64,000 nt of DNA from Ophelia neglecta (Eukaryota): NCBI GenBank assembly GCA_965285935.1, contig OZ260661.1, forward strand, positions 135,408,001 to 135,472,000, in the 5' to 3' direction. Of the stretch, positions 6,083 to 51,400 are shown piece after piece; within the stretch, counting starts at the first letter, position 1; every line of letters starts with the position of its first letter. The translations under genes and the position numbers were made by a program. A model generated the notes under the pieces. The model made no database searches. It was not told where the DNA came from and saw only the letters and a program-made list of their open reading frames with translations.

Positions 6083-9000
6083 TCAATAAAGATGATGCGG
6101 CTTAAATTCCCTATTGGTCTGACCGTCAGGTTCTTCATCATCGTCATAAACACCGTTCGTATTGCCCTTATTGGCTAATGCATCTTTACGTTTGAACTTG
6201 TTCATTACTTTGAACCAAATTTTGGGGTGCCTTTGTCTTGATGCATAACTGTATTCTATGTCACTGTTTTCATTGTTTTGCTCCGTTTCCACTGGTTTTA
6301 CACGTGGAATATTCACGTAGTCTGCGCTATGTTGTATACGTTCCGCTGGTTTTTGTTGTCGGGTATTGACATAGCCAGCATTATGGTTACTGACTGGGGT
6401 GATTTCAATAGGTTGTGGACTAGCTGTATTGACGTAGCTTTCCTGTATAAAGCCACCCCAACTTTGAGCGACTTCCTGTGAATACACCGGGAAGTCGTCT
6501 GGAGTTGATCTACTCATGGTGCTAATTTGACCGAGAGCCAGAGCATCATTAATAACTTTATCTGCTGCTTGCTTGGCTTTCCTGAAAATAATTGAACAGT
6601 TTAACTGTCAAACTTTAGACAAATTGAACTATTTTTTATAATTAGGAAATAAACAGGCCCACGTATACCCTCCATTTTTTAAAATTACTACTCTCATAGC
6701 TTACATGAATTCAATGGTGTAGACGATATAGTTGAAACACAATTGATGATAAAATTAAAAAAGCAATAAAATTCTAACCTAAAGTGAGATTACTCTTCGA
6801 TAAGCGTTTCGTTTTTTGTAAAATCCAAAAAAATGAAAATAAATATGTTTAAACCAAGATTCTAACCTTTTTCTCCATATTACCACAACTAAAACAATAA
6901 TGGCGGCTGTGAAAAGTAAGGCCAGCGACACTCCGACAGCGATGTATGTCGTGCCTACAACAAGACAAACTAAGAAGTAAATAGCACATTTGTTATTTGA
7001 TAACTGCTTAATGAGTGAATCAAGCTCAATGAAGCTAGTTATTGGTTATCAATCAGCCAGATTTTTTGGCTGTTACCCAAAGTAATAAGAAAAGTTGTGA
7101 TTTATAAGAACACTGGAAAAACGAGAAGGAATTAAGATCATATCCTTTGTCTTGACCGACCCCTTCCGCATCCCCAAATCCAAAAATCAAGTAAACATCG
7201 CTTAGATTATAAAGCTGAATTCGGATTAATATATTGTATATAAAAGCCTATAGGAGTACAATGGGATGTCATTTACTTACCATTATTTTGACCGCCAGTG
7301 TTTGCCAACGTTGTTATAGTTTGCGTCGAACTAGGGACTAGTGTTGTTGGATATGTATTGGGACCTAAAACATATATTGCACATAACTGGTTGTAAACTA
7401 TTATATATTCTTAAAACAAAAGATGTGAGTTGTTGCAAGTAATATAAACGATTTGGCATCACATCGTGGGGAAAAGAAGATGAATGCTACCATGTTTCCT
7501 AACCCCTCGACCTCCAAGAAAATGCGCTATTATTTCGTTGAAAAAGAAAAAAACATGACGACTGAATATACCACAAAGTTAATACCAAAATGTCAATCAG
7601 ATGGCTTTTTATGCCAACCATACAAAACATACTCTAATAAACGAATGTAACGACCCTTACGGGCATTTACATGTGAAGTTAAAGGGCACTACAGTTGTGA
7701 CAGAAAAAATCATACGTAGTTATCTTGCTTACCACTATAGGGAGGTCTCGTGCTTTCCACCGAGGTACTTCTAGTAGTTTTTTTGCTAGTCGAATATGGA
7801 GGAACTATGCTCCGTAACGGGGTCTGCGAGGGTTGTGTGGAGACAAATTCTGGTGTTGTAAACCGGTTTATGGTTCGTCTGGGGGGATTGGTAACTATCC
7901 TTGACGTTGGACGGACAACTGTGTAAATAATACATGACAAATGATTGTATTATTATTTTGAGGTAACATAGAACATATATATAAGTATTATATCAAAAAT
8001 TTAGTTTTTATACAAAATCAAGACTTATTTACAAACCAATCGAGAATTTATTGCATGTAGTATGGTAATGTTGACGGTATGATTTCTATTTACCGTTTTG
8101 TTCGCAAATATATCTCAAGCTCGTGCCGTGTGCCTGGCCATACCAAAATCCAGCTAATGACATGGCGACATGGCCGAGGTTTTGTCCCGGCTCGGGATGA
8201 TTTATACTGTCGCCATTGAACCAGTTCATCCAGGAGTATGCTGATCCATCTAGCCACTCATAGCCCTTCCGGCGTAATAAAACGTCTTCAGTAAAGACGA
8301 GATGATCCAGATTGGTCAGTCCTATCCAGAACATGTTCTCATTGGTACAGGATATGTCTCCCGAAGAACACACGGAAGGACTGAAATATTAATTTAAAAA
8401 ACCTTTGCTAACGTTAGCCATTAACAATAAGCATTGGAGAATAAAAAGTTGGGTAAGACGCTTTTCTATGACCTCACAATTCTCTTTTTCGAAGTGAATG
8501 TCAATCATATAAACACATAGCATATAATACCTTATTTTTTTTATAAGGGTGCACACTTAGATAAATGGCGTGTTGAATGGGGGGGGGGTTGCCCTAGAAA
8601 AATTATGTTATGGGCTGTTATAGGATGAAAAACTGTAAACATAACCAAAATTCTCGAGATATGACTATTGTGTATTACACTGTGTGTGGTTAATAGGAAT
8701 ACTTGGAGGAATTAGTTTCGCGTCTACCAACTCCATATTCCAATCCTTTTATAATATATATACTTACATTGCACCAATGATTTGGTTAGTTTCTTCATTG
8801 GACGTGACAGAAACCAGTCTTGCCCTAAGCTGTCCACACTGTGCCGAAGAATCGTCCCAGTCCCGGAGATCTTCCCTCTCGGATATAAAATAACACCTGT
8901 TATTGCTATACATCCACAGCCCTGACGAGGGACATTGGCCCCACACACCTGCACACGAAGAAGATAACACGTCTCATTATAAGATACTTGTTCAACCCCA

Positions 9001-12192: not shown

Positions 12193-14623
12193 CTAGCTTG
12201 TCATATATAAGGTGTTTTCCACAACAGTTGTTTCCTCGTCATCGTTCTCACACTGTTCAGCTGGCATTTCCGTGAGCACTGCGTATACGTGGCTTTCTGA
12301 TTCCAGTTCAGCGGTGCTTCCATTGGGATGATTTATATATGTGTTATCGGTAATTGGAGATAGGCCATTGCCAACAGTAGCATAGGCTGTCTCAGCACCC
12401 TGTGAAGGCGCTATTGGCCCAATCACGTTTTGATAGTACACTGCGTCACCCTCCATATGTCCACGTATTGTTTCATCACAATAAATTGGGTTGTTGCCAG
12501 CTGTATCTTGATGGTAAATGTTTTCTGTCGTTCCTGTTGGCTTGAGGTTTGAGCTACACAGTGAACATCTGAAGAAACAATAATTCACGTGATCATGGCA
12601 TATCATCATTGATTTTGGGAAATGTATATCCATATACCTAATTTATCATGTAATGGTTATCGTTATAGGTAAATTATTATATAAGATCTCATTTATTTAG
12701 CTACCACACTTCACCATATCTTACCTTCGTCTTATGATTAACACTGCTACTATGACGGCTGATCCTAGAACAAACAAACTTGCAACACCGACACCTATGC
12801 CAATGTTTCTTCCTACGACAAAAATGCCAAGACGATTTAGTTAGTTTCAACTTATTTGGAAATTGATTGCTATATATCAATACTGTTCTTCTAGGGGATT
12901 AATATTCGCTTCCACTGGGTTTGATATGATACTATACGTCATATAGGCGTCTAATCACCTGAATCTGCCATCGTCATGGGTTCGGTATTGTTTAGACCGA
13001 CGGTGTACACTGTGGATCGCATGGCAATATATTCAGTAGTAAATGACAATGTGGTTGGCTCTGCAGCACCAGACATCTGACTTGTTGCGTTGCCCTCAGT
13101 AATTAAACGAGCTGGATGAAATAAATAGTGAGGTGTAATATTTGCACTTTATTGGTAAATCTCTGAACCTTTAAGTACATTAGATTTACATCAAGAAAAT
13201 TGACATGCAGCAAGCCACACATTAGCTTACCCGGTTTTTCACATATAGAGGGGCGCTGATCGTTTCGCTTTCTGCTATACCAATATCCGGTTGTACCTCC
13301 CATTGAGGCGTAACATTCCGAACGATCCGGTTCGGTGAATGCGTTATCATTACGCCAGTTATACCAGGTATAAGTTGTTCCGTCTAACCATGTCCAACCT
13401 GTCTTCCTGTGCCGTCACTGCCAGCTATGGCATGACCGGTTACTTATGAGTCCAATCCAAAGGACCGACGAAAGGTCATTCCTTACAATTACAAATGCAA
13501 GTATTGATATATGATCCGTTTGTACACAATATATTATATATGATATATGATATATATATATATATATATATATCTAGATTATAGCATTTACAAAAATTGT
13601 CAAGGCTTAGAGCCAAAATATTCCATAACCTTAAAGTAATACATAGGGCATCACAGGCATCATATGATTTAAGTTTATGACCCCCCCACCCCCCCATAAT
13701 TAATAAAACAAATTGGATGACAGTGAAATTTTGCTTGACCTGCAAAGCCGTGCTTAATGTTTTATGGTATACAACTACTTTCCCCAATTGAGGCAGATAT
13801 CCGAAAGCTGTGAAAGCTGAACAGTTGAAACTTGCTAAGAATAATGGTGTTTATAAGTCATCATTTCTTCAAAAATTATGAATGTACATGGGTTTCCTGA
13901 CATGTCTCTCACTTACTTAAACCGGTAGAGAAGAAACACGTACTTTAAAACCACATTTGAGTTTCACAACGCCATTCCTACACACATAATTATATAATTG
14001 TAAATTGTTATATTTAAAAAAAATAGGAAAGTACAGCTGATCCAACAAGAAGGCAGTCTCGTCCATATTTCCCACTGAAACAAGTGTAGCATCCATAGAT
14101 AAACACGCTTGTTTAGCCAAGTCGAATGTTTTATTGTCCAAATCCACAAGGTAACAATGATGATTATAGAGCTTCCACCCATCATCACAGTGTTGTGTCA
14201 AACCTGCAAAGAAATTAATACAACACTCAGGTAGTCATTGCATGATTTATTTCGGTCGGGGAAAATGGCGAAACAAGGAGAGTGTACGAGTAAAATCCAC
14301 TTGAACTTTCCTAGTATTAATGGGTGACATGTGATGACCAAAAGGCAACATCTTATTAATTAAATGGACATGGGTCTGACGTAGCCGCAAACTGTGGCTG
14401 ACTTGATAGTTTCTATTCTATTGTAAGCTTATGTAAACTTGTAGTGTACATTCGCATACAAGTTAGTATAGTTCTATTTGACATGTGATTACACCCTACC
14501 AATGATCAAAATATTAATAGATGCTCCCATAGCTTTATACACCAGCATTCAAAATGGACACCTACCTAAATTGCTGACCATTAAAGCGACCATTATCAAA
14601 AACAGTATCAGTGATTCATACAT
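12193..14623 (-). pseudogene. CLR2: CTLD receptor with in-frame TGA in the lectin exon (pseudogene, or lectin-less ~224-aa isoform)
   Basis: Exons 14623-14566 (signal), 14203-14035 and 13481-13231 (CTLD, with TGA at 13417-13415 in ..SCHSWQ*RHRKTGWTWLDG..), 13111-12959 (stalk), 12812-12725 (TM), 12568-12193 (tail: NPIY, YQNV, TAYATV, VYAVL, VVENTLY). The rest of the frame is intact. Confidence 0.8.
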
Positions 14624-14912
14624 TTTTTCGACGATGTTGTCACATGTCTGATCACCACCCTGTTTATGCTTCAGTGAGATACACTGCGGCTTAGAAATAT
14701 TGAGGGGTGTTTTTTGTGCGTATTGCTTATAAGGAACACCGTAAAGCATACCTTCATGTATCTGGTGATAAGTGTATTTCGTTACACATCGTGAACAGAC
14801 CGTGACAATGTTTACACTTAAAATAAAGTTTGCTACGGATCGAGGTTGACGAAATGATTGGGCTTGCGTGACACCTTCTCCAAGAAGCCATCTAAAGGAA
14901 CGGGAACCTGAC

Positions 14913-14914
<2 letters not shown>

Positions 14915-14968
<54 letters not shown>
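14915..14968. repeat. (AG)27 microsatellite upstream of CLR2
   Basis: Uninterrupted AG dinucleotide run. Confidence 0.95.
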
Positions 14969-14972
<4 letters not shown>

Positions 14973-16210
14973 GGAGAAATGACCGTTGGTAAACCAGATT
15001 GGGGAACATAACCTTGACACCTGACTTGAATAACCCTCACCCATACTATCTCCATAACCCTTTAATGAACCCCAGCCCCAGCCATAGGCCTTCTCCAGCC
15101 TTAAGGCTTAGACCATCCGATAAAGGTACATGACTCCGCCCCTCCTAGTCTTCACACAACCAATTTTAAGCAATAACCAAAATACGAAAATGTTATACAT
15201 TTCGAACTCTGGAATGTGGCTACCTGTATTTGGTGCTGTGCTTTCTTCGCTGTGCTAGAATAGTAACTAACCTTACTCCAACCACAACTACCGCCTTCCT
15301 CCCCACCCCGCCCGTCTGAAGAAAGTGGGCTCTACTTCACACCTAAAATTCTTACCCACAGTACATCTACATGTAGGCCTTGCATACATGTGTACCATAA
15401 TTATGTTGGGGCATTTGCACACACAAAGATACTTCCTGGTTTCGTAAATATTTATATATATACAAGACACGTTCATAGAAAGTGATTATAATAAACCTAA
15501 CATAAGCTTACATAATAATATGTCAGGGTATTTGATCAGAACAGCTTTTTTAATGTTTGGTACCGATTGTGTCACGTCAACCTCCTACAGACTGGACACA
15601 AACCCATAAGGATAAAGGACATTACAATGCAAATGTCGAAAGTCAACAGGTAAATCCCGTGGGATAAAATACAGATTATATGTAACTGCCATATTTAGAT
15701 AACAATAAACTGATAAAAAAATAATCTATAAAACAAATATAAGTTGCTTAAGACATGTATTAGGACATATATTGGCTTCGGCCATGATCTTCCGCGATCC
15801 ATAAGTTTACTTAGTTTGAATATTATGCACCCAAGAAAACATTTAATGACAAAGTAATTTAAATGAGAAAAGGTGTATTCTTGGAAAGCAGGTACATCTT
15901 ATCCTTAACTTTCATTACATGTGTTCATTCTGATCGACTTTTCATGCATGCTAAACATGTTAAAGCAAGTTATCATGTATAATTGCTAAGCCATTCATCA
16001 TAATTCCAGGAAATGTCTACCATTATTCTACTTAATCAAAACAATCAAATCTCGTTTTGCTCAAATTTCAAAATCCATTTGTAAAGTCACTTGCCCAAAT
16101 ACAGACATACACATTTAGAATCGAACATCACATATGTTATGTCATGTACTTTGGGTGCGAAATAACAAGTTGTTGTATATACAATACAACGACCAGCTTC
16201 TCATATTGTA

Positions 16211-18887
16211 TTATTCAGTCATTATGTTCTTGTATAAAGTATTTTCCACAAAAGTTGTTTCCTCGTTTCCACACTGCTCAGCTGGCATTTTCGTCATTCT
16301 TGGCACTGCGTATACGTTGCTGTCTGATTCCAGTACAGAAGTGCTCGCATTGCGATTATTAACATATACGATATCTGTAGTAGGAGATGGTCCATCGCCA
16401 ACAGTCGCGTAGGCTGACTCAGCAATCTGTGATGGACCTACTGACCCAATCACATTTTCATAGTACAATGTGTCACCCTGCTTTCTTCCACTTATTGTTT
16501 CATCAAAATATATTGGGTTGTTTCCAGCCGCATCTTGTTGGTTATAGTTTTCTGTCGTTTCCTTTGGCTTAGGATTTGCGTCAAACTGTGAACGTCTGGA
16601 GAAAACAATGATAAGAGAGAAACACGTGATTATTCTGAATAGACACATGTTCAGGAGTTTAAATGTTAAGAGGGCCATTTCTATTCAATGCCTAAAAAAA
16701 CCACCGTAAAGGACTGGTACTCTCCTGGAACGAATATCCCGCGGACTAGACTTAGCAACCCTAAGCGCAACACAGAAGTCCGCCGGTGTTTAAACAATAG
16801 CATTTTAGATCCGTCGGTGCAGAAATCACACTATTATGGGGATTTGGTCTACAAATCTTTGGTTATTAATACCCCTGATCACAAAATACATAGGATTTAA
16901 AGTTGGAAGGACCTTTCAGCCAGGGGGACTTTTTAATCTTATACACTGAGTCCGTTTCTATTCAATACACAGAGAAACCGAGTCATAATACCTTAAAACT
17001 TACTGTCATGACTAGGGTCGTGGGAAAAGGTCAGAGCATTGATTCGAATTCATTGTTATACATGTTCTAGTCGTTTTACACAGTTTTCAACTAACCATTA
17101 GTTCAGACACAAATTGATGTTCGGACATTATATGCATATTCATATATATAATATATAATACTTTAACTATAATTATCATATTGTTAGCATATCTTTACAT
17201 GGATCATTTTAATATACGCACCACGCTTCCCCGTATCTTACCTTCGTCTCATCATTAACAGTACTATTATGACTGCTGTTGTAAGAACAAAGAAACAAGC
17301 AACACCCACACCTATACCGATGTTTCTTCCTAGGAGAAAGATGCAATAATTCTGTTAGTTATGTTCAAAATGCTAAAATTGCTGATTTTTATATAATACA
17401 TTTTTTCCCATTTGGTGATCTGTCGACTCCGCAGAGTTATGGTAAAATATTCCATATACACGTCTTATTACCTGATACTGCCATTGTCATATGTCCTGTA
17501 TTGTTTACACCACTGGTGTCCACTGTGGAACGCAGGCCAATATATTCAGTAGTAAATGACAATGTTGCCGGAATGTCTGCAGCACTTGACATCTGCCTGG
17601 TAGCGTTGACGTCAGAAACTAAACGACCTGGATAATAGGAATGGATAGCGAGTTCTATGTTTGGGATTCTTTGAAAATCTCTTTCACGATTAGTATGTTC
17701 CTTTGGCCATGTTCAAGAGAAGGTCACGCAGACGGCCATACGGATTATTACCGGGTTTTTACATATAGAATGACACTGGCCTGTTGTACCAATATCCGGT
17801 GGTATCTACAATTGCGATGTTACATTGCCTATGCTCCATCATTTTTCCATCTGACCATATCTACCTTTTTTTACTTTCTCCCAACGAAATTTGCAAAAAT
17901 TGCAGTCCCTCTTCCTTCATGCATTTCGGTTTGGCAACAATGTGAAAGAATTGTTCCAAAAATGTTCAGTTCAAGGCCAAATGTAGGCGCTTCATTACCG
18001 TCAATTAAACCCGCCTAGCTTTATCGCTCTAACGTGCTTGGCCAATAACATTTCGTAACTCTCATAGACTAAGCAGTAATTTTGTACAAAGTATGCCAAA
18101 GAAATTTCCCTGACCCAAAAACATAATTCAAATAAAATGTTTTCTGTGCGTCAAGTTGTTTTACAGCCATTTTTTGCTTTTTTCATTTCTTTATCAATTT
18201 GACCTTCAACATACACTCCTCTTATTAATTCAGGGCTGAACTGCCATATCAAAAGTACGAATGCATACATTGGATGTTATTATATATGTCAATATTGTTA
18301 GATTTCATCCATACGCTTATCAGTACATGGCCAGGCATGGACGTCGGATTCCTGTCGATTTTTGGGAACCGTACCTGTAATGTAGCAATAGGAAGTGAGC
18401 GCAAAGTAGTCACTACAAATAGTTTCCAGTTTCAGGCATACTTATAATGGCCTTATTGTTTCTGTGCATTGAGGCGTTGCTTAGCCAATACAAATTGACC
18501 CGGTGGCGTCGCGCCCAGCCGCGGTGGGGCTACCAGACAATCTTGTGTCCAAATTCATATGCCCCCTTTTTTCTGTGAATATGGTTGGGGCCAGAAACAA
18601 AACTAGACAACAAAAAGAAAGCCACAAGAAGAAAACTGTATCACGACCTGTTGTATCCGCAAAGCGTGTCTAACATGCGAGTTAGGCTATTTTTTACAAT
18701 GTTGTGATGAACGTGCTATCACGTTCACTACCGCATGATTTTGTCCATAATACTTATTATATACTACCGACCAACGATCAAAATATAGCCAGATTTCGCC
18801 GCCATCTTTATAACACAGTATACACCTACCGAAACTGGTCATCATTAAAGCCGCCAATATTATCGACAGTGTAAATGATTCATTCAT
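16211..18887 (-). CDS. CLR3: CLR2 paralog lacking the lectin domain; predicted 228-aa signal-stalk-TM-tyrosine-tail protein
   Basis: Exons 18887-18830 (signal MNESFTLSIILAALMMTSFG), 17627-17472 (stalk), 17329-17242 (TM), 16595-16211 (tail); 687 nt open frame with canonical GT-AG. Only a frameshifted 3' scrap of CTLD-b remains (~17830-17752, QCNIAIVDTTGYWY..); no recognisable CTLD-a exon. Confidence 0.7.
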
Positions 18888-20099
18888 TTCTCTACTTAAA
18901 ATCTATCCACGATATGGTCACATGCCTGATCACCACCCCGTAGCTGCTGATACACTGCTTAGAACTAAGTAAGGATGCCATTTTATGCAAATTGCCGTCC
19001 AGAGTACAGTTTATGACATCTTCTAAACGGCTGTGAGTGTACTTCGTGACTCATCGTGAATAGGCATAGTAATGTTTTCCCTGAAAGTATTGTTAAAGCG
19101 GATCTAGGTCTAGGGAAGAGAGAGGGAATTCCCCTTTACTAAAACAGCCATATTTTCTGAAGGAAATTACAGACAGCCAACCAGTGGAACGGGGACCAGA
19201 TTGATCGACTATACGCTTTAATATGTCAATGCGGGTACATCTCCATGTAGTACATACGCATATGTGACGCATCATTCAACAGTAAACAGTTTAGACTAGC
19301 TCTACCCTCATTCCCAACATACTTAGCTCTCGACGCATGCCAGAGCAGCATCTCCAATAAACAGCGCAGCCTGTAATAAAGTTGACCTGTGATAAATATG
19401 GACATTATACAGAGTATATTGCGCGTAACAATGATAAATCAACGCAGTTTTATTGTTTACTATCATGATTTTGTAAAATATGCTTGAAGCATGCTTCCTC
19501 GCGGCTAAAAGTACGTGAAATGGATAATTCATCTTGTTTTTATTGAGATGTGGAGTTTTATTCAATTCGTTGTAGATATGGAAACTTTATATGCTGCATA
19601 TTTTATACATGCATATGTTAGGCATGACAAGATATTTGAAGAATGTTCGTTTGTACTGCTACTTGGTATTGGCACATTGCGTTGTATAACAGGGTGGTAT
19701 GGTTTTATACCTCTTCATATATATAGGCCCACGTATGGGAGTATATTTGTGGGGGTAAATTTGTACTGTGTCTTTATGTGTGTGTGTGTGTGCCCGCGCA
19801 CACATTTTACCACGTGATAATGAGCTTGCCTTGCGGCGGGATATGTTTGGTGTTCTGATTCAGACGATCCCATGAGAAATGACTATCTTAAAAGAAACCC
19901 TAGCTTAATCAGTTATGTTTCTTAACCGATAGTTACTGATATTTTGACATGAGACTTAATGATAGTTAACATTCAAATGGTGGTTTAACATTCGAGAAAG
20001 CCAAGATTGGTATAATGATCATCTTAAGTTGACATATTTCTAAATAGGTTTAGTAAAATCAAAGAAAATACAGTGCTATCAATCCAGACATTAAAAATT

Positions 20100-20800
20100 G
20101 ACATATGCACTTTCGCTGATGAATGGATATTTGTGGTCAATAGCCTGACCGCCTATGTGTCCACGTCCATGTTAGACTTACTAGTAAAGCAAAATCGTCA
20201 TCTGCATGTGGTTCAGCTTTCAGTCAGTAGTCCCATTCATATTCAGCTTGATTTAACCAGTACCCGTCGTCCAACGTCGAATTACATGGTAAGTATAGGG
20301 CATGTTTCTTTGCAGTCCTAAGAAGAACAAAGTGCATCGACGCGACAAATAAATCATCGAGAATAATATGTTTAAAAAGTTCCTCCACTGGCGAATATGC
20401 TTTTTGTACCTCCTAAAATGTAAAAATCATTGAACAATTTCGGCCGGGCCAAAGCAGGTTTGCATACTTAGCCGACCATTCTAATTCAATGGGAATTTTC
20501 AGTTACATGTCGAATTACAGCTGCCTTATTTTAAATAATCATGCACAGAAAAACACACCGTCTGCAAGGTAACATATCAATAGACAAAACCATGCTTATG
20601 GGCAATACTTACGAATCTATTAAAGATTAGATACATTGGCTTTTGCAACTGAGCCAAGTGTCGCACTTAGTCTTTAATAGAACTGTTCTGCATCAATAAA
20701 AATTAAATTTATGATGAAAACACGATAACAATGGTTATCAAAGAAATCCCATACGTGTCTACAGTTACTACTTAAGGCTAAAATAAAGGAGATACAGACA
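20100..20800 (-). pseudogene. Decayed partial duplicate of the CLR4 lectin exons
   Basis: 20100-20350 aligns to the CLR4 CTLD-b exon (gtcgatgcac..ggactgcaaagaaac; tggttaaatcaagctgaatat) with stops. ~20760-20800 matches the start of CLR4 CTLD-a (acagttactacttaa.gcta). Confidence 0.7.
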
Positions 20801-21985
20801 CCAGAATAAAGACAATAAAAGTAAATCAGGCAAACTAACTTAACTGTTCATAGAGTAACTCTTTTGTCGCAATTTGTGATTTCGAATATATCAATGATGC
20901 AATGACTCACAACACCACTGCTACATGGGATATGTTATAATCTGTGTTTTGATTTGTGTTTCCTTTACATTCTGTAATATTTTACATAGGTAGCGCATTG
21001 TTTGTTTAAGTTGAATAATATGATGGATCCACGATGTTACTTTTATCATATTGTTACTGATCTAGGCCTGATTGTATTAATGATGCTGTCGAGAAGGATG
21101 ATCTGAATTATATTGTATTGAGAATATTTAGTCTGTGAATATTTGCCTTGAGCCGGTATTAAGCAGTTTCTTTTTTCAAATATTGGGTTCACTGGGTATA
21201 ACAGCGAAGTAAATGTCTGATTAACACAATGTTTCATTTTTGAAAGATATTGAGTGTAAAATCCAAATTTTCTTTGGATTATGCCAAATGTGCAACCAGT
21301 AATGTTGTTGTTCACATAATTGCAACTGATAATTCATGGCAGTGTGAATTAAGAAGGTTATCACAATCAAAGATTATTCTTATTCTTGAGCAATCATCCT
21401 TTTTTTTTTCTTGAGAAGTCATTCAATTGTGTAATTTAAATGAGACAATAAATCTAAAATGAGTCTTCATACTAATAAATAGTGCTGTTTCACGGGTTAA
21501 AGTCCTAAAGTTTCTTAATTGAGTATTCGACATATAATGTATCTAGACTTGCTAGGAAAACAATCGCGAAAGTCTTAGACATAAAGTCAAACATTAAAGG
21601 CCAGTATACATAATATCAGTCAAACTTTACTTTATTTTCATCAATACCCATGCCTTTCTCTGCTCGCAAAAATGTGAGACACTAATATTCATAATTATTT
21701 TATGCTACCAAAAAACATGTCGGACAATCGATCGCCTACATATATTTATTTGTGTTGACTATCTTCCATATCCAGTATACAACAAATAATTTTTAATAAT
21801 CTTACATTCTTAATCTTATGCTGAATGCTTGATTGGCACGGATGGTAATATGTAGTTAGCATAGTCGGGTTCAGTCTTCTTGACAAAACAAGTCTAAGCT
21901 AATTGTGATTTTATTGCTGATACTGCCATTACATAGTTACTGGATCGTTACTAACACTATTTGGCTGTATATTATGTATGACTAT

Positions 21986-24900
21986 CTAATGAGCGCTGTC
22001 ATACATGCTATTATCAACCATACTAGTTTCCTCTTCGTCGTGAACGCCACCCATCTGCGATGTGGAGCTCTGTTCTTTGAGTGTCCTTAAGTTCATATTC
22101 CTGCAAGCGGCACCACAAGCAATAAACGGTTCTTTGTTTGTTTCATATACAGTATTGTCAACCATGGTTGTTCCCACACTATCAGCTTTATTTTCTGAGT
22201 GAGCGATGTATGGAACTACATTAACCGAGTAATCATAGGGGTCGGAACCTTTAAGCTGTGTTTTCAGGTTCGTGTTTGTTACATCAAAAGTTAATACAGA
22301 GGTACAGGTATCATAAAAAGCTTCAGAAGTACAGACTGAGTTTTCTGATTTTGCCGATTCTCGATTTCTTGCCATATTGTCTCGATCGGATACTTTGTGT
22401 TCCTTTTCTAATGAAGCTGTTGGTTTACTTTGGTGTCCTGTTGGTTCTGAGCACCTACAGCATAAAATAGAAGTCTTGTCTAGTTTCATATAAAGGATAA
22501 ACTGTTTGTAGATGGTGTTGCTTTTGCCTTGTTTCTCTGTGATAAAAAAAAAAACATTGAAATTATTAACATTGAAGTTAACGTGGTCATCAATGAAACA
22601 CTATATATATGAAAAGGTAAAAGAGCTGCCAATGGAAACAATTCAGACAAATCATAATTGTTTACTATTTACTGTGGTAGTTCCGACATCTTCAGAAGCC
22701 CCGTTAATTTTATATCTTAAACGTGTCAAGTGACCCAAACCACAGTCTTTAACTTATTAAGCGCCACCCCGTGTACGATATGACTTTGTTCTCAAAACCA
22801 TATGAGAGAACCCTTTTAGGAAGATGCAATCATTATATCTGCTGATATATTGTTTTGTTGAAAATCCAACAGGGGTAATTTACCCATTGATTTATAAACT
22901 TTTATGATTATTCCAGGGTTAAAACTGAACATTCTGGACGACTGTATGATAATTTTGTACAAAACAAATGGAAAATGTTGGCTTTGTCCAACTTGATATC
23001 TGGTAACCAAGGCAACCAATATTCATATTGCTATTTTCATTTGTCTATCCGAAGCCTCTACACCTGAAGCATGTTACATGTAATCTAGAATCAGTTTCTG
23101 AACAATGGCCTTCTTGCGAACTGGCATGCTTTCTGTTATTCCAGATTCTGTTATGCAATGTTCTAAGGTTTCCAAAACTTTCTTCATAATGTCCCAAGGA
23201 AATGGGGGGGGGGGGGGCGGAGGAGCGGGATTGGTATCTGGCAAATTTGGAGCTAGGGACTATACATCGCCACCTTTAACCTATTAACATCATGAACTGC
23301 GGTGGTATTATACTTACATTTTATTTTATACAGTGTGCCAACAAAATTATTAATTCTAGACAAGGGTACCAAAACCTGAAAGATGAAGACCACGGATTCC
23401 CGTATGGGAAGCTCTGAATTATTTTACACATGGACTATTACATTATACTTTTAATTTTACCTTCGTCGTAGGACTCTTATTATAAGCGTAACACCTCCAA
23501 CTAAAAGTAGAAGAAAGCCGGCTGTACCTATGCCCATGCCAATGATCGTTCCTTGGTCTGTAATTATAGAGGCTTTAGTTTTAGTCGTCAAATGTACATT
23601 ATATCATATTTGTGGTCAGATTGAATCGATAAATATTAGGTATATAACGATATACAAATATGGCATTTACCAAAGTGCAGTGAATTATCATTTTTATTCA
23701 TATAGGAACCATCCGTCTTGGTGTCTGTCTTGACTGTTGACATTTCAAGGACGTCCGAAGAAGGTTTATAGGGACGATCTGTCACAGGCGGAGGGAGATC
23801 TGTTTAGGATGGATCTAATTCGTGAACGTTTCCATTTATATTACTAATGGTATTAACCGTAGTAGCACGATTGGTGTTGAATTCTTTTAAACGATACTCT
23901 TCATGCATATATTTGATGCTGAGGAACTCATTAATGTAATCAAGAAAGATTAAAAATCTTGACCACACGTGCCAACCTCGAAAACAAATCATTGACTTTA
24001 TTTGATATTAATGACCACGATTATTGGTTGATGAAGCCGATCCAGATTTATAATTGTGTGATAATTAAGTGAAACTAGTATAGAACAAAATTTTATTATA
24101 TCCAGGAAAATGTGTTTGCCTAACAGTATGATAAGTTTCAAACTAACTCGACTTGCTTACGACTTAAACATTCACATATTCGCAGCATGGCTTAGAAAAA
24201 AAACCTTTGGTAGGAACCTGGCTTCATAAAACAAATGGCTTGATGTATACAATCACGAATTTCAATGCAGGTCTGAGGGCCAGGAGTATCACTAATGAGT
24301 ATAAAAGACGGATTTATTCAAATATTTGAAATGAATATACCTAAGCTATACTTATGAATATTGGCTAAGAACCAGGTTGGTATAAAAGTAATGTTATGAA
24401 TAGTGTTGTTTATCGACCAAGCGACACACATATTCAATCGTTTATAAGTAAGCTTTTCCAAGGAGTTAAAAATCAACTGATTATCTGATTTCTATAATAA
24501 CTTGCTTAAAGAAGACAGCCGCTTTCTACTTCTGACTTTCTTGAAACTGTTTGTATTCCTTTAGTTTCGTGCCTCTTGCTGAAAAGCCAGCAGGAATCTA
24601 TAAGCAGTAAGCCAAACGTATTGATAACATTTTACTAAAGAATTTCAGAATAATAAATCGTTCACTGGCATATTCTTCGCTGACATATCTGGTAGTATTT
24701 CAATATTTAGCATTTGTATGACAACTGAATTATCAGTTATTGTTATATTCTGTAAATCCAAACAATATGTCTTCCAAATTTATCCTCATCTTTAATGAAA
24801 TTTCTCCTGAGATACTAAAAATATATAGGGGTAAGAATCCATAACTTACGCTAGCAATATTAAGCACACAAAGGTTAAATAAATTTCAGTAAAGTGTCTG

Positions 24901-27249
24901 TTCTAAAACCACATTGATCAAAATTTGAAGGGATTTGGGGGTTCCAAACACTTTAATGGTATAACATTTACCCGTAAAAGTATAAGACAGTAATAAAAGA
25001 ATTTAATATCAAAATTTGAATAGATGGGTTAAAAAGGTTAGCGATGTCACTAAATATGTGGAAAAACAAGCCTTTCTTTGCAATACTAAGCAATAGAAAG
25101 CTTTCTCTGAGTGTTGAATGTTGAGGTTACTAAAAGTGGAGTGCGCCCCAGTTTTTCCGGCCACTTTACTTCCTCTTCGTCTAACATCTTTGTCCAAATG
25201 GGTATTGCGGTAATTCATCAAACTATTGGTATTCCAATTGCGACCAATCGCGCTTCTTTTGTTGCATATTTGTATCTGTTCACTTATGAGTATGATTTTA
25301 TTTCTGGTTTCTTGAGGGGTGTGACGTTACACATATTATTTCACAAATACTTCAAGGCAATATGCTTGTGAAATTTATCCAACACTATAAGTATCTATAG
25401 TTACACCACTGACAGCCCCAATGGTTAATCATATTTGGAATTATTCTTCCATAAAGACCGAAATAACAGTTTATGTGCAAGTCTGCATAACAAAAGAGAT
25501 TATTTCGATTTTTTAAAGAACTCCCCATTACTCGATAGCAATATTCCTATATCCCCAGCATATGGGGTGTATACTTTGAGGTTCGTTGGCTTTGTAAGAG
25601 CTTGGGATTTTTTCTGGCTGATTTAAACGGAAGTCACGTAGGTCTGCTGTGAAAACTGGCAGAAAATTCACGGATAAATATTCCACCAATTTATGTAAAT
25701 AAAACTCTCGCCTTGAAGGCTTATCGGATTAAGGATTTCATCCGACTCGAGGAGATTCAAAATACGATCGATGACTTTCATTTTAACTGCTCGTGTGTAG
25801 GTTCTAGTTGCCATATTTCATCTATATCCTCCTTTGAACACTGACTCGTTTATTTTGTAGTCTGACTCGCAAAACTGTTGCCTAGTTATTGCAAGTGAAA
25901 TCTATATTTTTTTCGAACGTTTTATTTTGCTGTTTGGGACCTGGAAATTGATTTATTGGTGATTTGGCCTTTTCTATGAAAGGGAAAATATATATGGAAA
26001 AATTTATGGAAATTGCAAACCTTCTATTTGATTTTGTTTATAGTTTTAGTTATGGAATATTAAAGTATCACACCTATTGGAAAATGTATAAATGGTGGGC
26101 TAGACATGGTTGATGTGAGTAATTAAATTAATTAAAGAGTTTTCATATTAGTGGTCTGAATTGACAGGTGGTCTGACTATAGAAGTGATCTTTAAGGCAG
26201 ATTTCACTGTATAAACAAATGAACTTTTCAAACATTTATCATTCCAGACAGTGTAAAGTTTATCGACCATTGTTTTATAAATGCTCTTACCTGATATTTC
26301 ACATATGAAGGGATTTCTGCTCCCATCAACTTTACGACGACTGTACCATATGCCCGTTAAACTACCTGATAATGTTATATCGTCACCGGTTTGCGGCTCA
26401 TCTGCCTGCCAGTTGTTCCATTGGTATTGAGCTTGAGTTAACCAGAACCATCCGTCTTGCCTCGAACTAGGGTCAGTAAAGGAAACGTTTCTTTGCAGTC
26501 CAATCCAAAAAAACGTGCATCGACATGACCGCTAAAAACCATCAAGAAAATATACTACAAAAATCGAGTAATGCTCCTATTGTTATCCTCTGAAATAACA
26601 ATCTAAATTAATGGCATCATACATGCATTTGGGATATTATCAATGGGAATATTCTGTAACATGCCAACACATCAATTAATTTTTAATGAACGTGTACAGA
26701 AAGATGCAAAGACCGCAAAGTTACTTATCAGTAATTAATCACTTTGCGCTTTGAGATAATACTTACAACTCTTCTATCACAAATCTCGATACATTTGCAT
26801 TTGCTATTGACGCAAGTGTCGCATTCATCCTGTTACAGAAGTCTGCAGCTTTATCATAATGTACCATTTCGATGAAAGCACGATAACAATGATCATCGAA
26901 GTCAGTCCATCCTTCTCTACAGTTACTACTTAAAGCTACAGTAAAGGAGAAATCTAGCATATAACATGGATGCTAATTTCGCACTATAGCATCGACAAAA
27001 TCAAATAACCCACAGCATATCTTCAACGATGATCAAGGCTATTTGATTAAATTGCGGCTTTGCAAGATGGTCAAGTACATTGATAAAAGTGTCGTACATA
27101 CTTGCACGTTAAAATGACCTACAAGATTCGGCTCGGTAAATCAGAAAAAATAGAAAAACAGAGGCTTAAGCCCAAAAACAATGACACTTACCAAAACCTG
27201 TCTGAGATAGAACTAGCCATATTAACAACACTGTCGACAATACAATCAT
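21986..27249 (-). pseudogene. CLR4: CTLD receptor whose two lectin exons are out of phase (frameshifted, or lectin-less ~250-aa isoform)
   Basis: Exons 27249-27192 (signal MIVLSTVLLIWLVLSQTGFG), 26935-26767 (169 nt) and 26531-26291 (241 nt), which sum to 410 (not a multiple of 3), 23799-23671 (stalk), 23557-23461 (TM), 22454-21986 (tail with two MVDNxxY motifs). Non-lectin exons are intact and in phase. Confidence 0.72.
25150..25630 (+). mobile_element. Degenerate Penelope-like retroelement reverse transcriptase fragment in a CLR4 intron
   Basis: Translations HQTIGIPIATNRASFVAYLYLFTYEYDF and KRDYFDF..NSPLLDSNIPISPAYGVY resemble the PLE RT core (QxxGIPMGTNCAP) and thumb (KRDDFxF..FP.LDSNIP.SPAYGVY) motifs. 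The element may extend 5' to ~24100. Confidence 0.7.
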
Positions 27250-48439: not shown

Positions 48440-51400
48440 ATGATTCCGTCTATACTTGGATTCCTTGCCCTAATTACAGGTAGATAAGAGTTTGCTTAGA
48501 TACATTTCCGATCAATCTTTCCATTGTATCATGTTTCGCTGGTTTGGGGGATACTGAGAATCCTTAAAAGTACTGCCGTGTATAATATTTTGGGCATATC
48601 TTTCTTCTTGGCAGTTTTCACTTTGTAAATAAAATGCCCGGAAATTTCAGCCTATAAGTGCACATCAAATTCTCTGTCTTTGTCTCTGTTCTCTGTCTCT
48701 GTCTCTCTTCGTATGACATTTCATACAATTTGGCAGTTTACAGAATACGAACATAACAAGCAAGTATAGCAATGCTCACTGTTAAGTCACCGGGAACTGC
48801 TTTAGTGATGCTGACTCAAAAAAAGAACTTTTGAATATAACCAGCCTCTAAGCTCAACATGAATTTCTGGCAATGCCACATCGTTCCTGTGTTGAATTGA
48901 TTTCATCATATTACATTTTGTAGTTGAATGTGATAATTGGAAAACTAACAAATCATTCTCGACTAGCTTCTTTGATTAAGTGTTGATTTCAGGTGCGGTG
49001 GCACAATGCAATACTGCTGTGAACTGGATACACTCCGATGAACATTGTTATTACATCTCCGAGCCTAACGATTTACAAAACTACACCGCCGCGCTTCACA
49101 CCTGTCGGCAGCTCGGGAGTTATCTATTATCACTCACAAGCCCAGAAGAAACTGACTTTATAATATACGATATGTGAGTGTCATCTTAAATAACTTTCAT
49201 TCCTTTATAGTTGAAATCCGCTTGACTTAATATTAATTTTGAGAATGCGCGTAGTCTGTTTAATCAGACAACGTAGTGATAGCGCGGGAGTTTACTATCA
49301 TCAGCCACCAGTCCAGAACTAACTTATTATGTGTGATTTGGGAGTGTAATTCGTTCATCTTTTGTATTCATTTGAAGACAGATTTATGTGAATTGCACAA
49401 AAATTCATTTGCTGGTCTAAGGGACGGACCATTCAATATCTGGGGGGGGGGGGGGGGGGGGCGACAATTTAAAAAAAAAAATTGTTTGTTTCTGGTTATG
49501 CATAAAAAAAATTGTTTGTTTCTGACTCTGGAAAAAATAAATTGTTTGTCTGATATTTTCTTTTAAAAAAATTGTTTGCATAAGCACTGATCCATTCTTC
49601 GATGGATTCTAAAAAAAGGTTGGCCTGACGGCCAAATAATGACTTAACACATAGGGTATACAAGTTTGATCAAGGCTAGGGAAAAAATATTTGACAGAGA
49701 TTTGTTAGAAAAAAAAATTGTTTGCTTTCCAGATAGGAAAAAATAAATTGTTTGTTTGTCCAAAGCTAGAAATTTTTTTGTTTCACTAGAAAATATTTTG
49801 TCGCCCCCCCCCCCCCCCCCCAAATATCTAATCGTGCGTCCCTAATTTCTAGTGATCCTTTATACTTTTCAAATCCATCTGGCTTAAAATTAAATTTGAG
49901 AGTACTTGTAGTCTGTTCATAAAACTTAGAAACGTATTTCTGTCGTTACGGCCTATGGTGTTGTTTTAATGAAATAAAACCACGTGTCGCGTTCTTACAG
50001 AATGGTTGAACAGAATAAATCGGCTATTTCATATAAACAGCCATTTAAATTTAACTTGGTAAAATATAATTACTAACTCAATTGGTAATCTTGATAAAAA
50101 AAAAACAGTTACAATTAAATTTAAATCAATTAACAGGTTGGATTGCAAGCAAGAGGGACACTGCAACCTTTACGACCCTAAATATCTCTTCTGGATCGGA
50201 CTCGGAAAATACACTCGCACGCCTCAGGATACTATAACCCGGAGGCGCGGCGGATGGACATGGCAGAGCGGAGAAATGTACAGCTGGCAGAACTGGTATC
50301 CCGAGCATCCGGGTCCGGATATAGAACACGGATTGTTGTATTACACCGGGCAATGGGCTGGCAAAACGGCAAATGATCAACTGAGATATATATGTGAGGG
50401 AAAGATAAATTGTAAGTTTTTATTAAACATATTGCTGTGCGGTCTATAGCCACTTTGTAAAATTCCAATATATTGCTCGCCATTACAATGACAATTTCTG
50501 GTTGGCAGCAATGGGTGTTTGGGTTTCCAGCATCGTCTGCAGCATACAATATTATATCAGTATGATGCAGCTGCACATGCCCCTAGCCCTACTATGATCG
50601 GGTTTGATCACTCAAAGCCAATTCAGTCTTTAACGGGTAGGTGCTAAAACAATGGTAACTAGAACCCACACATTTGGCAGTTAAGAATATATTGTTTAGA
50701 ACAGTTTGTCAACTGAGTTTAAACAGAGACAAAATCAACACGCGCACTCGCTGAGTTTGCCAGACGTTACCGTAGATGATATAGAACCCATAGATGCACA
50801 GAAGTGACTTAACTTTGTTAGCTTAGTTATCCTGCTGCATTATTTCTTTGAGACTACTATCATTTTCCCCGTTTCCCCGTGTACTTGTAATCATCATTGT
50901 GTGCCAAATTAAATCACAATTTCATAATCTATACATAAAACCAATTTACAATGAGAGGCGGTTCAATGGCTCATAAATCAATTCATTTCTATGTGAACCC
51001 TAATATATAAACTTGTTTACCCAAACCAAATTAAGCTTTTCAACCAGCTACAGATGCGTGCAAAAATGTGACTGACGGCTATATGTTTATATTATTTTTA
51101 TTATTAAGAACAAAGTTAAAATGTATTGTTGCCACAGATCATATACCAAATGCATCATGCCTAATCACAAAAAGGCATACATATAAACAATTGGGGCTAG
51201 ATAATTGAGCGTGTAGTATAAAATTCTGTTACAAAAAGAGGCAGAAGCCTATATGTCTCGCCACATTTAAACCAAATCAATGTTTCGTTATTTGTAGAGC
51301 AAGGTGCAGGGGGAAAAGTCGTATCATATACACACACAAATGTATAGACACACTAGTGATAGTATCAGGTCAAATTAGAATGAATAAATAAGCGTTACAG

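What the first reader, a model, noticed from the sequence alone, without database searches (positions are those of the whole stretch)
12193..27249. Three neighbouring paralogs lost only the lectin domain: possible birth of transmembrane adaptor proteins
Seen: CLR2 has a stop in CTLD-b and weak CTLD splice sites (GTACTT donor, AAG acceptor). CLR3 has lost CTLD-a and most of CTLD-b. In CLR4 the CTLD exons are out of phase. In all three, the signal, stalk, TM and tail exons are open with canonical splice sites, and the CTLD exon pair is a symmetric phase-1/phase-1 cassette. Skipping it gives 224-, 228- and 250-aa proteins with a short ectodomain, TM and 6-8 tail tyrosines. The true pseudogene CLR0, by contrast, is also broken in its tail. 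Established: this architecture defines vertebrate transmembrane adaptors (LAT, PAG, SIT, LAX). Inference: receptors were repeatedly converted into ligand-less signalling adaptors rather than simply dying.
Basis: partly seen in the sequence, partly recalled or inferred. Interest (0 to 1): 0.85.

Follow-up and report, generated by a model that had tools for sequence, protein, structure and literature searches.

The report
Lectin-less copies in receptor gene cluster
In a tandem cluster of invertebrate C-type-lectin membrane receptor genes, three copies are damaged only in their lectin exons; one (CLR3) seems to have kept its lectin-less remainder under selection, the other two are single-mutation knock-outs, and no RNA data show that any lectin-less protein is made.

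Summary
On the minus strand lie paralogous type-I receptor genes with the exon order signal, CTLD-a, CTLD-b, stalk, TM, Tyr-rich tail.

- **CLR2:** one in-frame TGA in CTLD-b, and a uniquely weak intron between the two CTLD exons.
- **CLR3:** CTLD-a and the start of CTLD-b are replaced by old repeat fragments. The remnant carries a TAG, a 42-nt deletion and an 11-nt frameshift.
- **CLR4:** its CTLD cassette is one base short, at a T7 run.

In all three, the other exons are open with canonical splice sites. Skipping the cassette gives 224, 228 and 250 codons.

Phase-1/1 symmetry is generic for extracellular modules. CLR2 and CLR4 have one lesion each, so intact remaining exons carry no weight; they may be young pseudogenes or null alleles in a very heterozygous individual.

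CLR3 is different. Several lesions in its CTLD remnant against none in 687 nt plus six splice junctions is unlikely under plain decay (P about 0.01). CLR2/CLR3 exon indels are all in frame, and dN/dS is 0.56.

No RNA run, no homologue of the tail outside this genome and no outgroup exist. Expression and adaptor function remain untested.

The parts
14566..14623 (-). CLR2 signal-peptide exon (ends in phase 1)
   Evidence: ATG, hydrophobic core, donor GTAGGT
14035..14203 (-). CLR2 CTLD-a exon, open, with a derived weak donor GTACTT
13231..13481 (-). CLR2 CTLD-b exon with an AAG acceptor. It is intact apart from one in-frame TGA at 13415-13417
12959..13111 (-). CLR2 stalk exon (phase 1 to phase 1, two N-glycosylation sequons)
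12725..12812 (-). CLR2 transmembrane exon
12193..12568 (-). CLR2 cytoplasmic tail exon: 8 Tyr, 2 YxN motifs, juxtamembrane CSLC, C-terminal VENTLY
18830..18887 (-). CLR3 signal-peptide exon
17880..18760 (-). CLR3 filler in place of CTLD-a and the 5' part of CTLD-b. It consists of fragments of old dispersed repeats and has no similarity to CLR2
17751..17875 (-). CLR3 decayed CTLD-b remnant: TAG at 17861-17863, a net 42-nt deletion and an 11-nt frameshifting deletion
17472..17627 (-). CLR3 stalk exon
17242..17329 (-). CLR3 transmembrane exon
16211..16595 (-). CLR3 tail exon: 8 Tyr, 3 YxN motifs, 65% identical to the CLR2 tail
27192..27249 (-). CLR4 signal-peptide exon
26767..26935 (-). CLR4 CTLD-a exon, open, with a strong donor GTAAGT
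26291..26531 (-). CLR4 CTLD-b exon, one base short of being in phase. A T7 run lies at 26507-26513, just upstream of WIGL
23671..23799 (-). CLR4 stalk exon
23461..23557 (-). CLR4 transmembrane exon
21986..22454 (-). CLR4 tail exon: 6 Tyr, no YxN, C-terminal VDNSMY. It is the only copy in the genome
20149..20778 (-). CLR4-like dead fragment. It has only CTLD-a (with stops) and part of CTLD-b, and no stalk, TM or tail

Best explanation
This is a lineage-specific, tandemly duplicated cluster of type-I membrane C-type-lectin receptor genes. It evolves by birth and death, and its members sit at different stages.

CLR2 and CLR4 are very recent knock-outs of an otherwise intact lectin domain: one nonsense codon in CLR2, and one base lost at a T run in CLR4. 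They are most simply young pseudogenes or null alleles. In CLR2, both splice sites of the intron between the two CTLD exons are weak, so both exons are poorly defined. The exon pair may therefore already have been skipped in part of the transcripts (inferred).

CLR3 lost its lectin exons long ago. Its signal exon would now splice directly to the stalk exon and give a 228-aa membrane protein with a roughly 50-residue glycosylated stub, one TM helix and a tail with eight tyrosines (YxN, YxxV). This frame appears to have been kept by purifying selection after the lectin domain was lost (shown statistically, not by expression).

The product would most likely act as a ligand-less, tyrosine-phosphorylated docking or modulating partner of the intact receptors. 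That last step is inference by analogy only.
For: - Gene models and lesions.
- The CLR2 and CLR4 CTLDs keep every family-conserved Cys, WIGL and the GWxW motif apart from the single lesion.
- Cassette share of coding bases is 0.38 and 0.35.
- The CLR2 donor GTACTT is unique among seven paralogues.
- CLR3: at least 2-3 independent lesions in a 178-nt remnant, plus loss of CTLD-a, against none in 687 nt, six junctions and the ATG. Likelihood ratio 0.03-0.005 and joint P about 0.01 under decay.
- Exon mismatch is 0.20 against 0.39 in the interleaved introns (P = 2e-11). There are 4 exon indels, all in frame, against 11 intron indels of which 1 is a multiple of three (P = 0.004).
- dN/dS is 0.56, CI 0.38-0.82.
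- The interleaved introns are as diverged as the flanks, so recent gene conversion does not explain the open frame.
- The filler is made of old repeats.
Against: - No RNA run exists for this organism in the index, so no transcript of any form is shown.
- Constraint is mild: mismatches by codon position are 44/34/57, P = 0.05.
- dN/dS averages both lineages and the time before the CTLD was lost. No outgroup exists: the tail has only two copies in the genome and no homologue elsewhere.
- All four displayed heterozygous SNPs in the CLR3 tail are non-synonymous, including Tyr17Asp.
- CLR3 has no AATAAA within 360 nt of its stop, whereas CLR2 and CLR4 have one at +49 and +71.
- The deletions in the remnant could stem from one complex event. 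That would leave only two independent lesions (P about 0.04).
- The pattern was picked out after the fact.
Confidence: 0.5

Rival explanations
1. All three genes are plain pseudogenes or null alleles in a decaying cluster. The open remaining exons of CLR3 are luck or the result of clustered mutation, and no lectin-less protein is made.
For: - The cluster is full of wreckage: CLR0 and the CLR4-like fragment at 20149-20778.
- CLR2 and CLR4 have one lesion each, which gives no power.
- dN/dS of 0.56 fits CLR2 at about 0.3 with CLR3 neutral for much of its lineage.
- The shown CLR3 tail SNPs are 4 non-synonymous to 0 synonymous.
- CLR3 has no proximal poly(A) signal.
- There are no homologues and no RNA.
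Against: - The joint probability of at least 2 lesions in the CLR3 remnant with an intact 687-nt frame plus splice sites is about 0.01 at best.
- All exon indels are in frame.
- Seven of eight tail tyrosines are conserved between CLR2 and CLR3.
Confidence: 0.33
2. One reading: CLR2, CLR3 and CLR4 were each converted into ligand-less transmembrane adaptors, made by skipping or loss of the symmetric CTLD cassette.
For: - In-frame skipped products of 224, 228 and 250 aa with signal, TM and 6-8 tail tyrosines.
- Both splice sites of the intron between the CLR2 CTLD exons are weak, as expected for poorly defined exons.
- CLR2 has a juxtamembrane CxxC, and CLR2 and CLR3 have YxN motifs like LAT/NTAL (PMC3342071).
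- The CLR3 statistics.
Against: - CLR4 has strong sites at all four CTLD exon borders and no YxN motif. Its lesion is a single base at a homopolymer.
- The CLR2 CTLD is otherwise perfectly conserved, so its stop is very recent.
- Inclusion of the cassette would give a premature stop and probably nonsense-mediated decay.
- The stub ectodomain is about 50 aa, not the 'few amino acids' of TRAPs (PMC3342071).
- There is no expression evidence.
Confidence: 0.1
3. The point lesions of CLR2 and/or CLR4 are assembly errors or are confined to one haplotype. These two would then be ordinary functional lectin receptors, and only CLR3 is truly lectin-less.
For: - The CLR4 lesion is one base in a T7 run.
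- The sample is extremely heterozygous: about 190 variant rows in 6 kb, with alternative contigs differing by 2-4%.
- Both CTLDs are otherwise intact.
Against: - No alternative letter at 13415-13417 was among the rows shown, although 150 rows were hidden.
- The derived weak donor and acceptor of CLR2 are independent of the stop.
- CLR4 was not covered by the single reads call.
Confidence: 0.07

Closest known systems
Vertebrate transmembrane adaptor proteins (TRAPs: LAT, NTAL/LAB, LAX, PAG, LIME, SIT, TRIM)
   Same: They share a single TM helix and a cytoplasmic tail without an enzymatic domain but with many tyrosine motifs. These include the Grb2-type YxN motif: 2 in CLR2, 3 in CLR3. CLR2 also has a juxtamembrane CxxC like LAT, NTAL and PAG (class features from PMC3342071, PMC2194117, PMC2213442, PMC3291652).
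   Different: - There is no sequence homology, and the tail has no relatives anywhere.
- The predicted ectodomain stub is about 50 residues with two N-glycosylation sequons and follows a cleavable signal peptide. TRAP ectodomains are 'only few amino acids'.
- CLR3 lacks the CxxC and CLR4 lacks YxN.
- The origin from a receptor by domain loss is not described for TRAPs in the papers I could search.
- Phosphorylation and SH2 binding are untested.
Type-I membrane C-type-lectin-domain proteins (such as layilin, CD302; from my own knowledge)
   Same: The ancestral architecture is the same: signal peptide, CTLD, stalk, TM, cytoplasmic tail. Pfam Lectin_C matches the CTLD exons.
   Different: - This is a lineage-specific family of about a dozen CTLD-b exons in two clusters on one chromosome.
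- It has an unusual Cys pattern and a long loop after WIGL.
- Its tails are Tyr-rich and end in VENTxY.
- CLR3 has no CTLD left.
Splice isoforms of lectin receptors that lack all or part of the lectin domain (such as LOXIN, the exon-5-less LOX-1; from my own knowledge)
   Same: The idea is the same: a lectin receptor locus can produce a membrane protein without a working lectin domain, and this protein modulates the full-length receptor.
   Different: Those are alternative isoforms of intact genes and are shown by cDNA. Here the domain is genomically disabled or deleted, and no transcript is known.
Birth-and-death immune receptor clusters with pseudogenes and truncated members (such as NK-receptor lectin clusters; from my own knowledge)
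   Same: Both show tandem paralogues of very different ages, dead fragments (CLR0, 20149-20778), single-hit knock-outs, high heterozygosity and fast-evolving tails.
   Different: CLR3's frame outside the lost domain is better preserved than decay predicts.

Membership tests
C-type lectin-like domain (Pfam PF00059 Lectin_C) | Sequence match to the Lectin_C profile across both halves of the domain | tested here: met
   Tested exon by exon.
- CLR2: CTLD-a matches profile positions 2-31 (15.2 bits); CTLD-b matches 51-107 (23.9 bits, above the 22.6 cut-off).
- CLR4: CTLD-a 15.9 bits, CTLD-b 15.6 bits.
- The CLR5 halves score 20-24 bits.
- CLR3 was not scanned. By DNA alignment to CLR2 it has only a 125-nt decayed remnant.
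C-type lectin-like domain (Pfam PF00059 Lectin_C) | Uninterrupted reading frame through the domain | tested here: not met
   CLR2 has a TGA at 13417-13415. CLR3 has a TAG plus deletions, and CTLD-a is absent. The CLR4 cassette is 410 nt, one base short.
Transmembrane adaptor proteins (TRAP class, defined by architecture, PMC3342071) | Short extracellular part of only a few amino acids | tested here: not met
   The skipped products keep a stalk exon of 153, 156 and 129 nt. That is about 43-52 extracellular residues after the signal peptide, with conserved NAT and NNT sequons in CLR2 and CLR3.
Transmembrane adaptor proteins (TRAP class, defined by architecture, PMC3342071) | Single TM helix and a tail without an enzymatic domain but with several tyrosine motifs (YxN and others) | tested here: met
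   The best 19-mer in each TM exon has a Kyte-Doolittle score of 2.2-2.8. The tails have no Pfam domain. Tyrosines number 8, 8 and 6, and YxN motifs 2, 3 and 0.
Transmembrane adaptor proteins (TRAP class, defined by architecture, PMC3342071) | Juxtamembrane CxxC palmitoylation motif (present in LAT, NTAL and PAG; absent in LAX) | tested here: inconclusive
   CLR2 has RRR-CSLC. CLR3 has RRR-RSQF, with no Cys. CLR4 has one Cys. The motif is optional in the class.
Transmembrane adaptor proteins (TRAP class, defined by architecture, PMC3342071) | The protein is expressed, tyrosine-phosphorylated, and recruits SH2 proteins | not testable with these tools
   No RNA run holds the locus. There are no proteomic data.
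Unitary pseudogene | Disabling lesion in the ancestral coding sequence | tested here: met
   All three genes carry at least one lesion in the CTLD cassette.
Unitary pseudogene | Neutral evolution of the whole gene after the lesion (stops and frameshifts spread over all exons, dN/dS near 1) | tested here: inconclusive
   CLR3: lesions are confined to the cassette, P about 0.01 under decay. Pairwise dN/dS is 0.56, but it cannot be split by lineage or period. CLR2 and CLR4 are too young to tell.

The most novel reading that the evidence does not exclude
The CLR2/CLR3 ancestor already made a lectin-less isoform by skipping its symmetric, weakly defined CTLD exon pair. After duplication, CLR3 became a dedicated lectin-less gene by deleting the cassette, and CLR2 is following. 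This would be a documented route by which a ligand-binding receptor gives birth to a LAT-like tyrosine-phosphorylated membrane adaptor in an invertebrate.
Probability: 0.15. Interest if true: 0.7.

Novelty: new variant of a known kind. Interest (0 to 1): 0.42.

Why it matters
The evolutionary origin of transmembrane adaptors (LAT-type scaffolds) is unknown. They have no detectable relatives outside vertebrates, and I found no paper that derives them from receptors.

A receptor paralogue that has lost its ligand-binding domain but keeps its signal, membrane anchor and phosphotyrosine tail under selection would be a concrete, testable example of such a birth. It would also be an example of an alternative isoform being resolved into a separate gene after duplication.

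If instead all three are ordinary pseudogenes or null alleles, the locus is a routine case of birth-and-death turnover in a lineage-specific lectin receptor family.

Tried and rejected
- **RNA evidence:** No junction could be tested.
- **Reads:** The zygosity of the CLR2 TGA stays unknown, and CLR4 was out of reach.
- **Tail homologues:** none at 85-271 aa in the 5.8-billion-protein set. The profile search of 1.84 billion representatives returned only a repetitive 565-aa protein matched through GQAQGDVLYYNG-type repeats, which I reject as spurious. The Atlas feature search scored 0.82, chance level. No Pfam family was found.
- **Outgroup for lineage-specific dN/dS:** the CLR2/3 tail has only two copies in the genome. 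The tails of the second cluster are only 24-36% identical, so this was abandoned.
- **Gene conversion as the cause of CLR3's open frame:** rejected, because the interleaved introns are as diverged as the flanks.
- **Alternative acceptors or donors that would restore phase in CLR4:** none without a stop.
- **A mini-intron or selenocysteine/readthrough reading of the CLR2 TGA:** not supported. The stop lies in the family-conserved loop frame, and no recoding signal was looked for.
- **Tyrosine conservation test:** 7 of 8 conserved, not significant against 65% background identity.
- **Literature:** searches for receptor-to-adaptor conversion and for CRD-less lectin isoforms in invertebrates found nothing pertinent.
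- All searches were exon by exon, by reference.


Full report
**What is there.** The window has 36-43% G+C and no Ns. It carries a minus-strand array of paralogous genes with the exon order signal peptide, CTLD-a, CTLD-b, stalk, TM, tail. I found the following members:
- CLR0 (about 166-2238, wrecked).
- A seemingly intact gene at about 6083-8970.
- CLR2, CLR3 and CLR4.
- A CLR4-like dead fragment at 20149-20778.
- A two-CTLD gene at about 29881-34528.
- A plus-strand member near 48989-50398.

Pfam Lectin_C matches the half-domain exons. A second cluster of the family lies 1.5 Mb away on the same chromosome. About a dozen CTLD-b exons exist in the 762-Mb genome. Earlier notes of the scan take the animal for an annelid or another lophotrochozoan; I did not test that.

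- The signal exon ends in phase 1.
- CTLD-a (169 nt) runs from phase 1 to phase 2.
- CTLD-b runs from phase 2 to phase 1.
- The stalk starts in phase 1.

In CLR2 the cassette is 420 nt, and the only break in it is a TGA at 13417-13415. That stop sits in the loop between WIGL and GWxW, which all paralogues share, so the frame is not in doubt. CLR2's CTLD-a donor is GTACTT, whereas all six other copies have GTRAG. Its CTLD-b acceptor is AAG behind a purine-rich stretch.

In CLR3 nothing similar to CTLD-a or to the first ~73 nt of CTLD-b remains. The space (17880-18760) is filled with fragments that match dispersed repeats at 67-87% identity. The remaining CTLD-b piece (17875-17751) has TGG>TAG, a net 42-nt deletion and an 11-nt deletion.

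In CLR4 both CTLD exons are open and well formed, but the cassette is 410 nt, one base short. A T7 run lies directly before WIGL. No alternative splice site restores the phase.

In all three genes the signal, stalk, TM and tail exons are open with AG/GT borders. Joined without the cassette they give 224, 228 and 250 codons. The tails hold 8, 8 and 6 tyrosines.

**How much of this is more than chance.** Phase 1-1 symmetry of an extracellular module is the norm in animal genes (established knowledge), so an in-frame skip is expected, not special.

For CLR2 and CLR4 the cassette makes up 38% and 35% of the coding bases. A single lesion falling there says nothing. A single lesion also implies so little elapsed time that the other exons would still be open in a dead gene. 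Both CTLDs keep every conserved Cys and motif, which confirms that the lesions are recent.

CLR4's four CTLD splice sites are strong. Its default transcript should therefore include the cassette and end prematurely.

CLR2 is a little different. Both sites of the intron between the two CTLD exons are weak, so both exons are poorly defined, yet the exons themselves have not decayed. That combination is what one sees in alternatively spliced cassettes. It allows, but does not show, that skipping preceded the stop.

**CLR3 is the informative case.** I compared CLR2 with CLR3.
- The tail exists only in these two copies.
- Exon mismatch is 0.20 against 0.39 in the three introns that lie between those exons (P = 2e-11).
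- Exons have 4 indels, all multiples of three. Introns have 11, of which one is a multiple of three (P = 0.004).
- dN/dS is 0.56 (bootstrap 0.38-0.82) and dS is 0.37.

So the frame was under selection for most of the time since duplication, and recent gene conversion cannot be the reason.

I then asked whether CLR3 could have been drifting since it lost its CTLD. I used the intron indel rate and a 4.2% stop-creating share of substitutions. An intact 687-nt frame with six junctions and the ATG allows at most about 0.04 substitutions per site of neutral time (P = 0.05). In that time the 178-nt remnant would rarely collect two or more disabling hits. The best joint probability is about 0.01, and the likelihood ratio against pure decay is 0.03 to 0.005 for two or three independent lesions.

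**Weaknesses of the CLR3 case.**
- The deletions might be one complex event.
- The pattern was chosen after the fact.
- The constraint is mild: mismatches by codon position are 44/34/57.
- dN/dS cannot be split by lineage because no outgroup exists.
- The four heterozygous SNPs that the reads tool displayed in the CLR3 tail all change the protein: K102T, A22T, D21E and Y17D.
- CLR3 has no AATAAA within 360 nt of its stop, while CLR2 and CLR4 have one at +49 and +71.

**Expression and relatives.** The single run search found no RNA run, only three DNA-like contig sets from one sample. Laid on 12995-18990 they confirm contig continuity and show about 3% heterozygosity. However, 150 variant rows were hidden, so I cannot say whether the CLR2 stop is heterozygous, and CLR4 was not covered.

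The tails have no homologue in either large protein collection. The one hit is a repeat artefact. They have no Pfam family and no meaningful Atlas neighbour. I sent no joined spliced model to any search or fold; all queries were single exons by reference.

**What it works like, and membership.** The CTLD-less products have the general layout of vertebrate transmembrane adaptors, which have a single TM and a non-enzymatic tail with tyrosine motifs. They carry the Grb2-type YxN motif (2 in CLR2, 3 in CLR3, none in CLR4), and CLR2 has a juxtamembrane CxxC (class definition in PMC3342071).

They fail the class's 'few extracellular residues' criterion: the stub is about 43-52 residues, glycosylatable, and follows a signal peptide. 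There is no homology. Phosphorylation and SH2 recruitment cannot be tested here. 'Works like an adaptor' therefore remains an analogy, and a dominant-negative or chaperoning partner of the intact receptors is equally possible.

**Verdict.**
There a maintained lectin-less membrane protein is about as likely as not.
- CLR2 and CLR4 are best read as fresh knock-outs or null alleles.
- The claim of three independent conversions is unlikely (about 0.1).
- Interest is moderate. The idea is attractive and cheaply testable by RT-PCR, but at present it rests on one gene and a P of about 0.01.

Noticed in passing
window 29881-34528 (-): This family member has two intact tandem CTLD cassettes (a/b, a/b), a long Ser/Thr-rich stalk and a Tyr-poor 176-aa tail. 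A VNDNNVY ending that resembles the family's C-terminal VENTxY motif lies in another frame just before the stop, which suggests a late frameshift in the tail.
   Followed up: partly
window 6083-8970 (-): This neighbouring member seems intact. CTLD-a, CTLD-b, a Pro/Ser/Thr stalk, the TM and a tail with three YVN(T/I) motifs are all open.
   Followed up: partly
window 20149-20778 (-): This dead fragment shows the opposite pattern. Only CLR4-like CTLD-a (with stops) and part of CTLD-b survive, with no stalk, TM or tail downstream.
   Followed up: partly
window 13231-13481, 26291-26531, 32346-33239, 8092-8373, 50186-50398: There are two CTLD subtypes. CLR2 and both CLR5 domains have a Cys in the long loop after WIGL together with a Cys in 'ECY'. 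CLR4, the 6-9 kb gene and the plus-strand gene lack both. The two Cys thus appear to be gained or lost as a pair, which suggests a non-canonical disulfide. None has the usual Cys of the W-x-D-x-x-C loop.
   Followed up: no
G000:C1:133842000-133953999 (loci L004-L008): A second cluster of the same family lies about 1.5 Mb upstream on the same chromosome. It includes a two-CTLD gene. Every TM exon seen there has CTLD exons next to it.
   Followed up: partly
window 12995-18990: The sequenced individual is very heterozygous here. There are about 190 single-letter variant rows and 20 indel rows in 6 kb, a 160-nt insertion allele at 15807-15815, and a 3-nt indel inside the CLR3 CTLD-b remnant (17782).
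   Followed up: partly
window 14915-14968: A perfect (AG)27 microsatellite lies about 300 nt upstream of the CLR2 start codon. Contigs of the reads break there.
   Followed up: no
window 48989-50398 (+): A further CTLD-a/CTLD-b pair on the opposite strand is most similar to the 6-9 kb gene. I did not model the gene.
   Followed up: no
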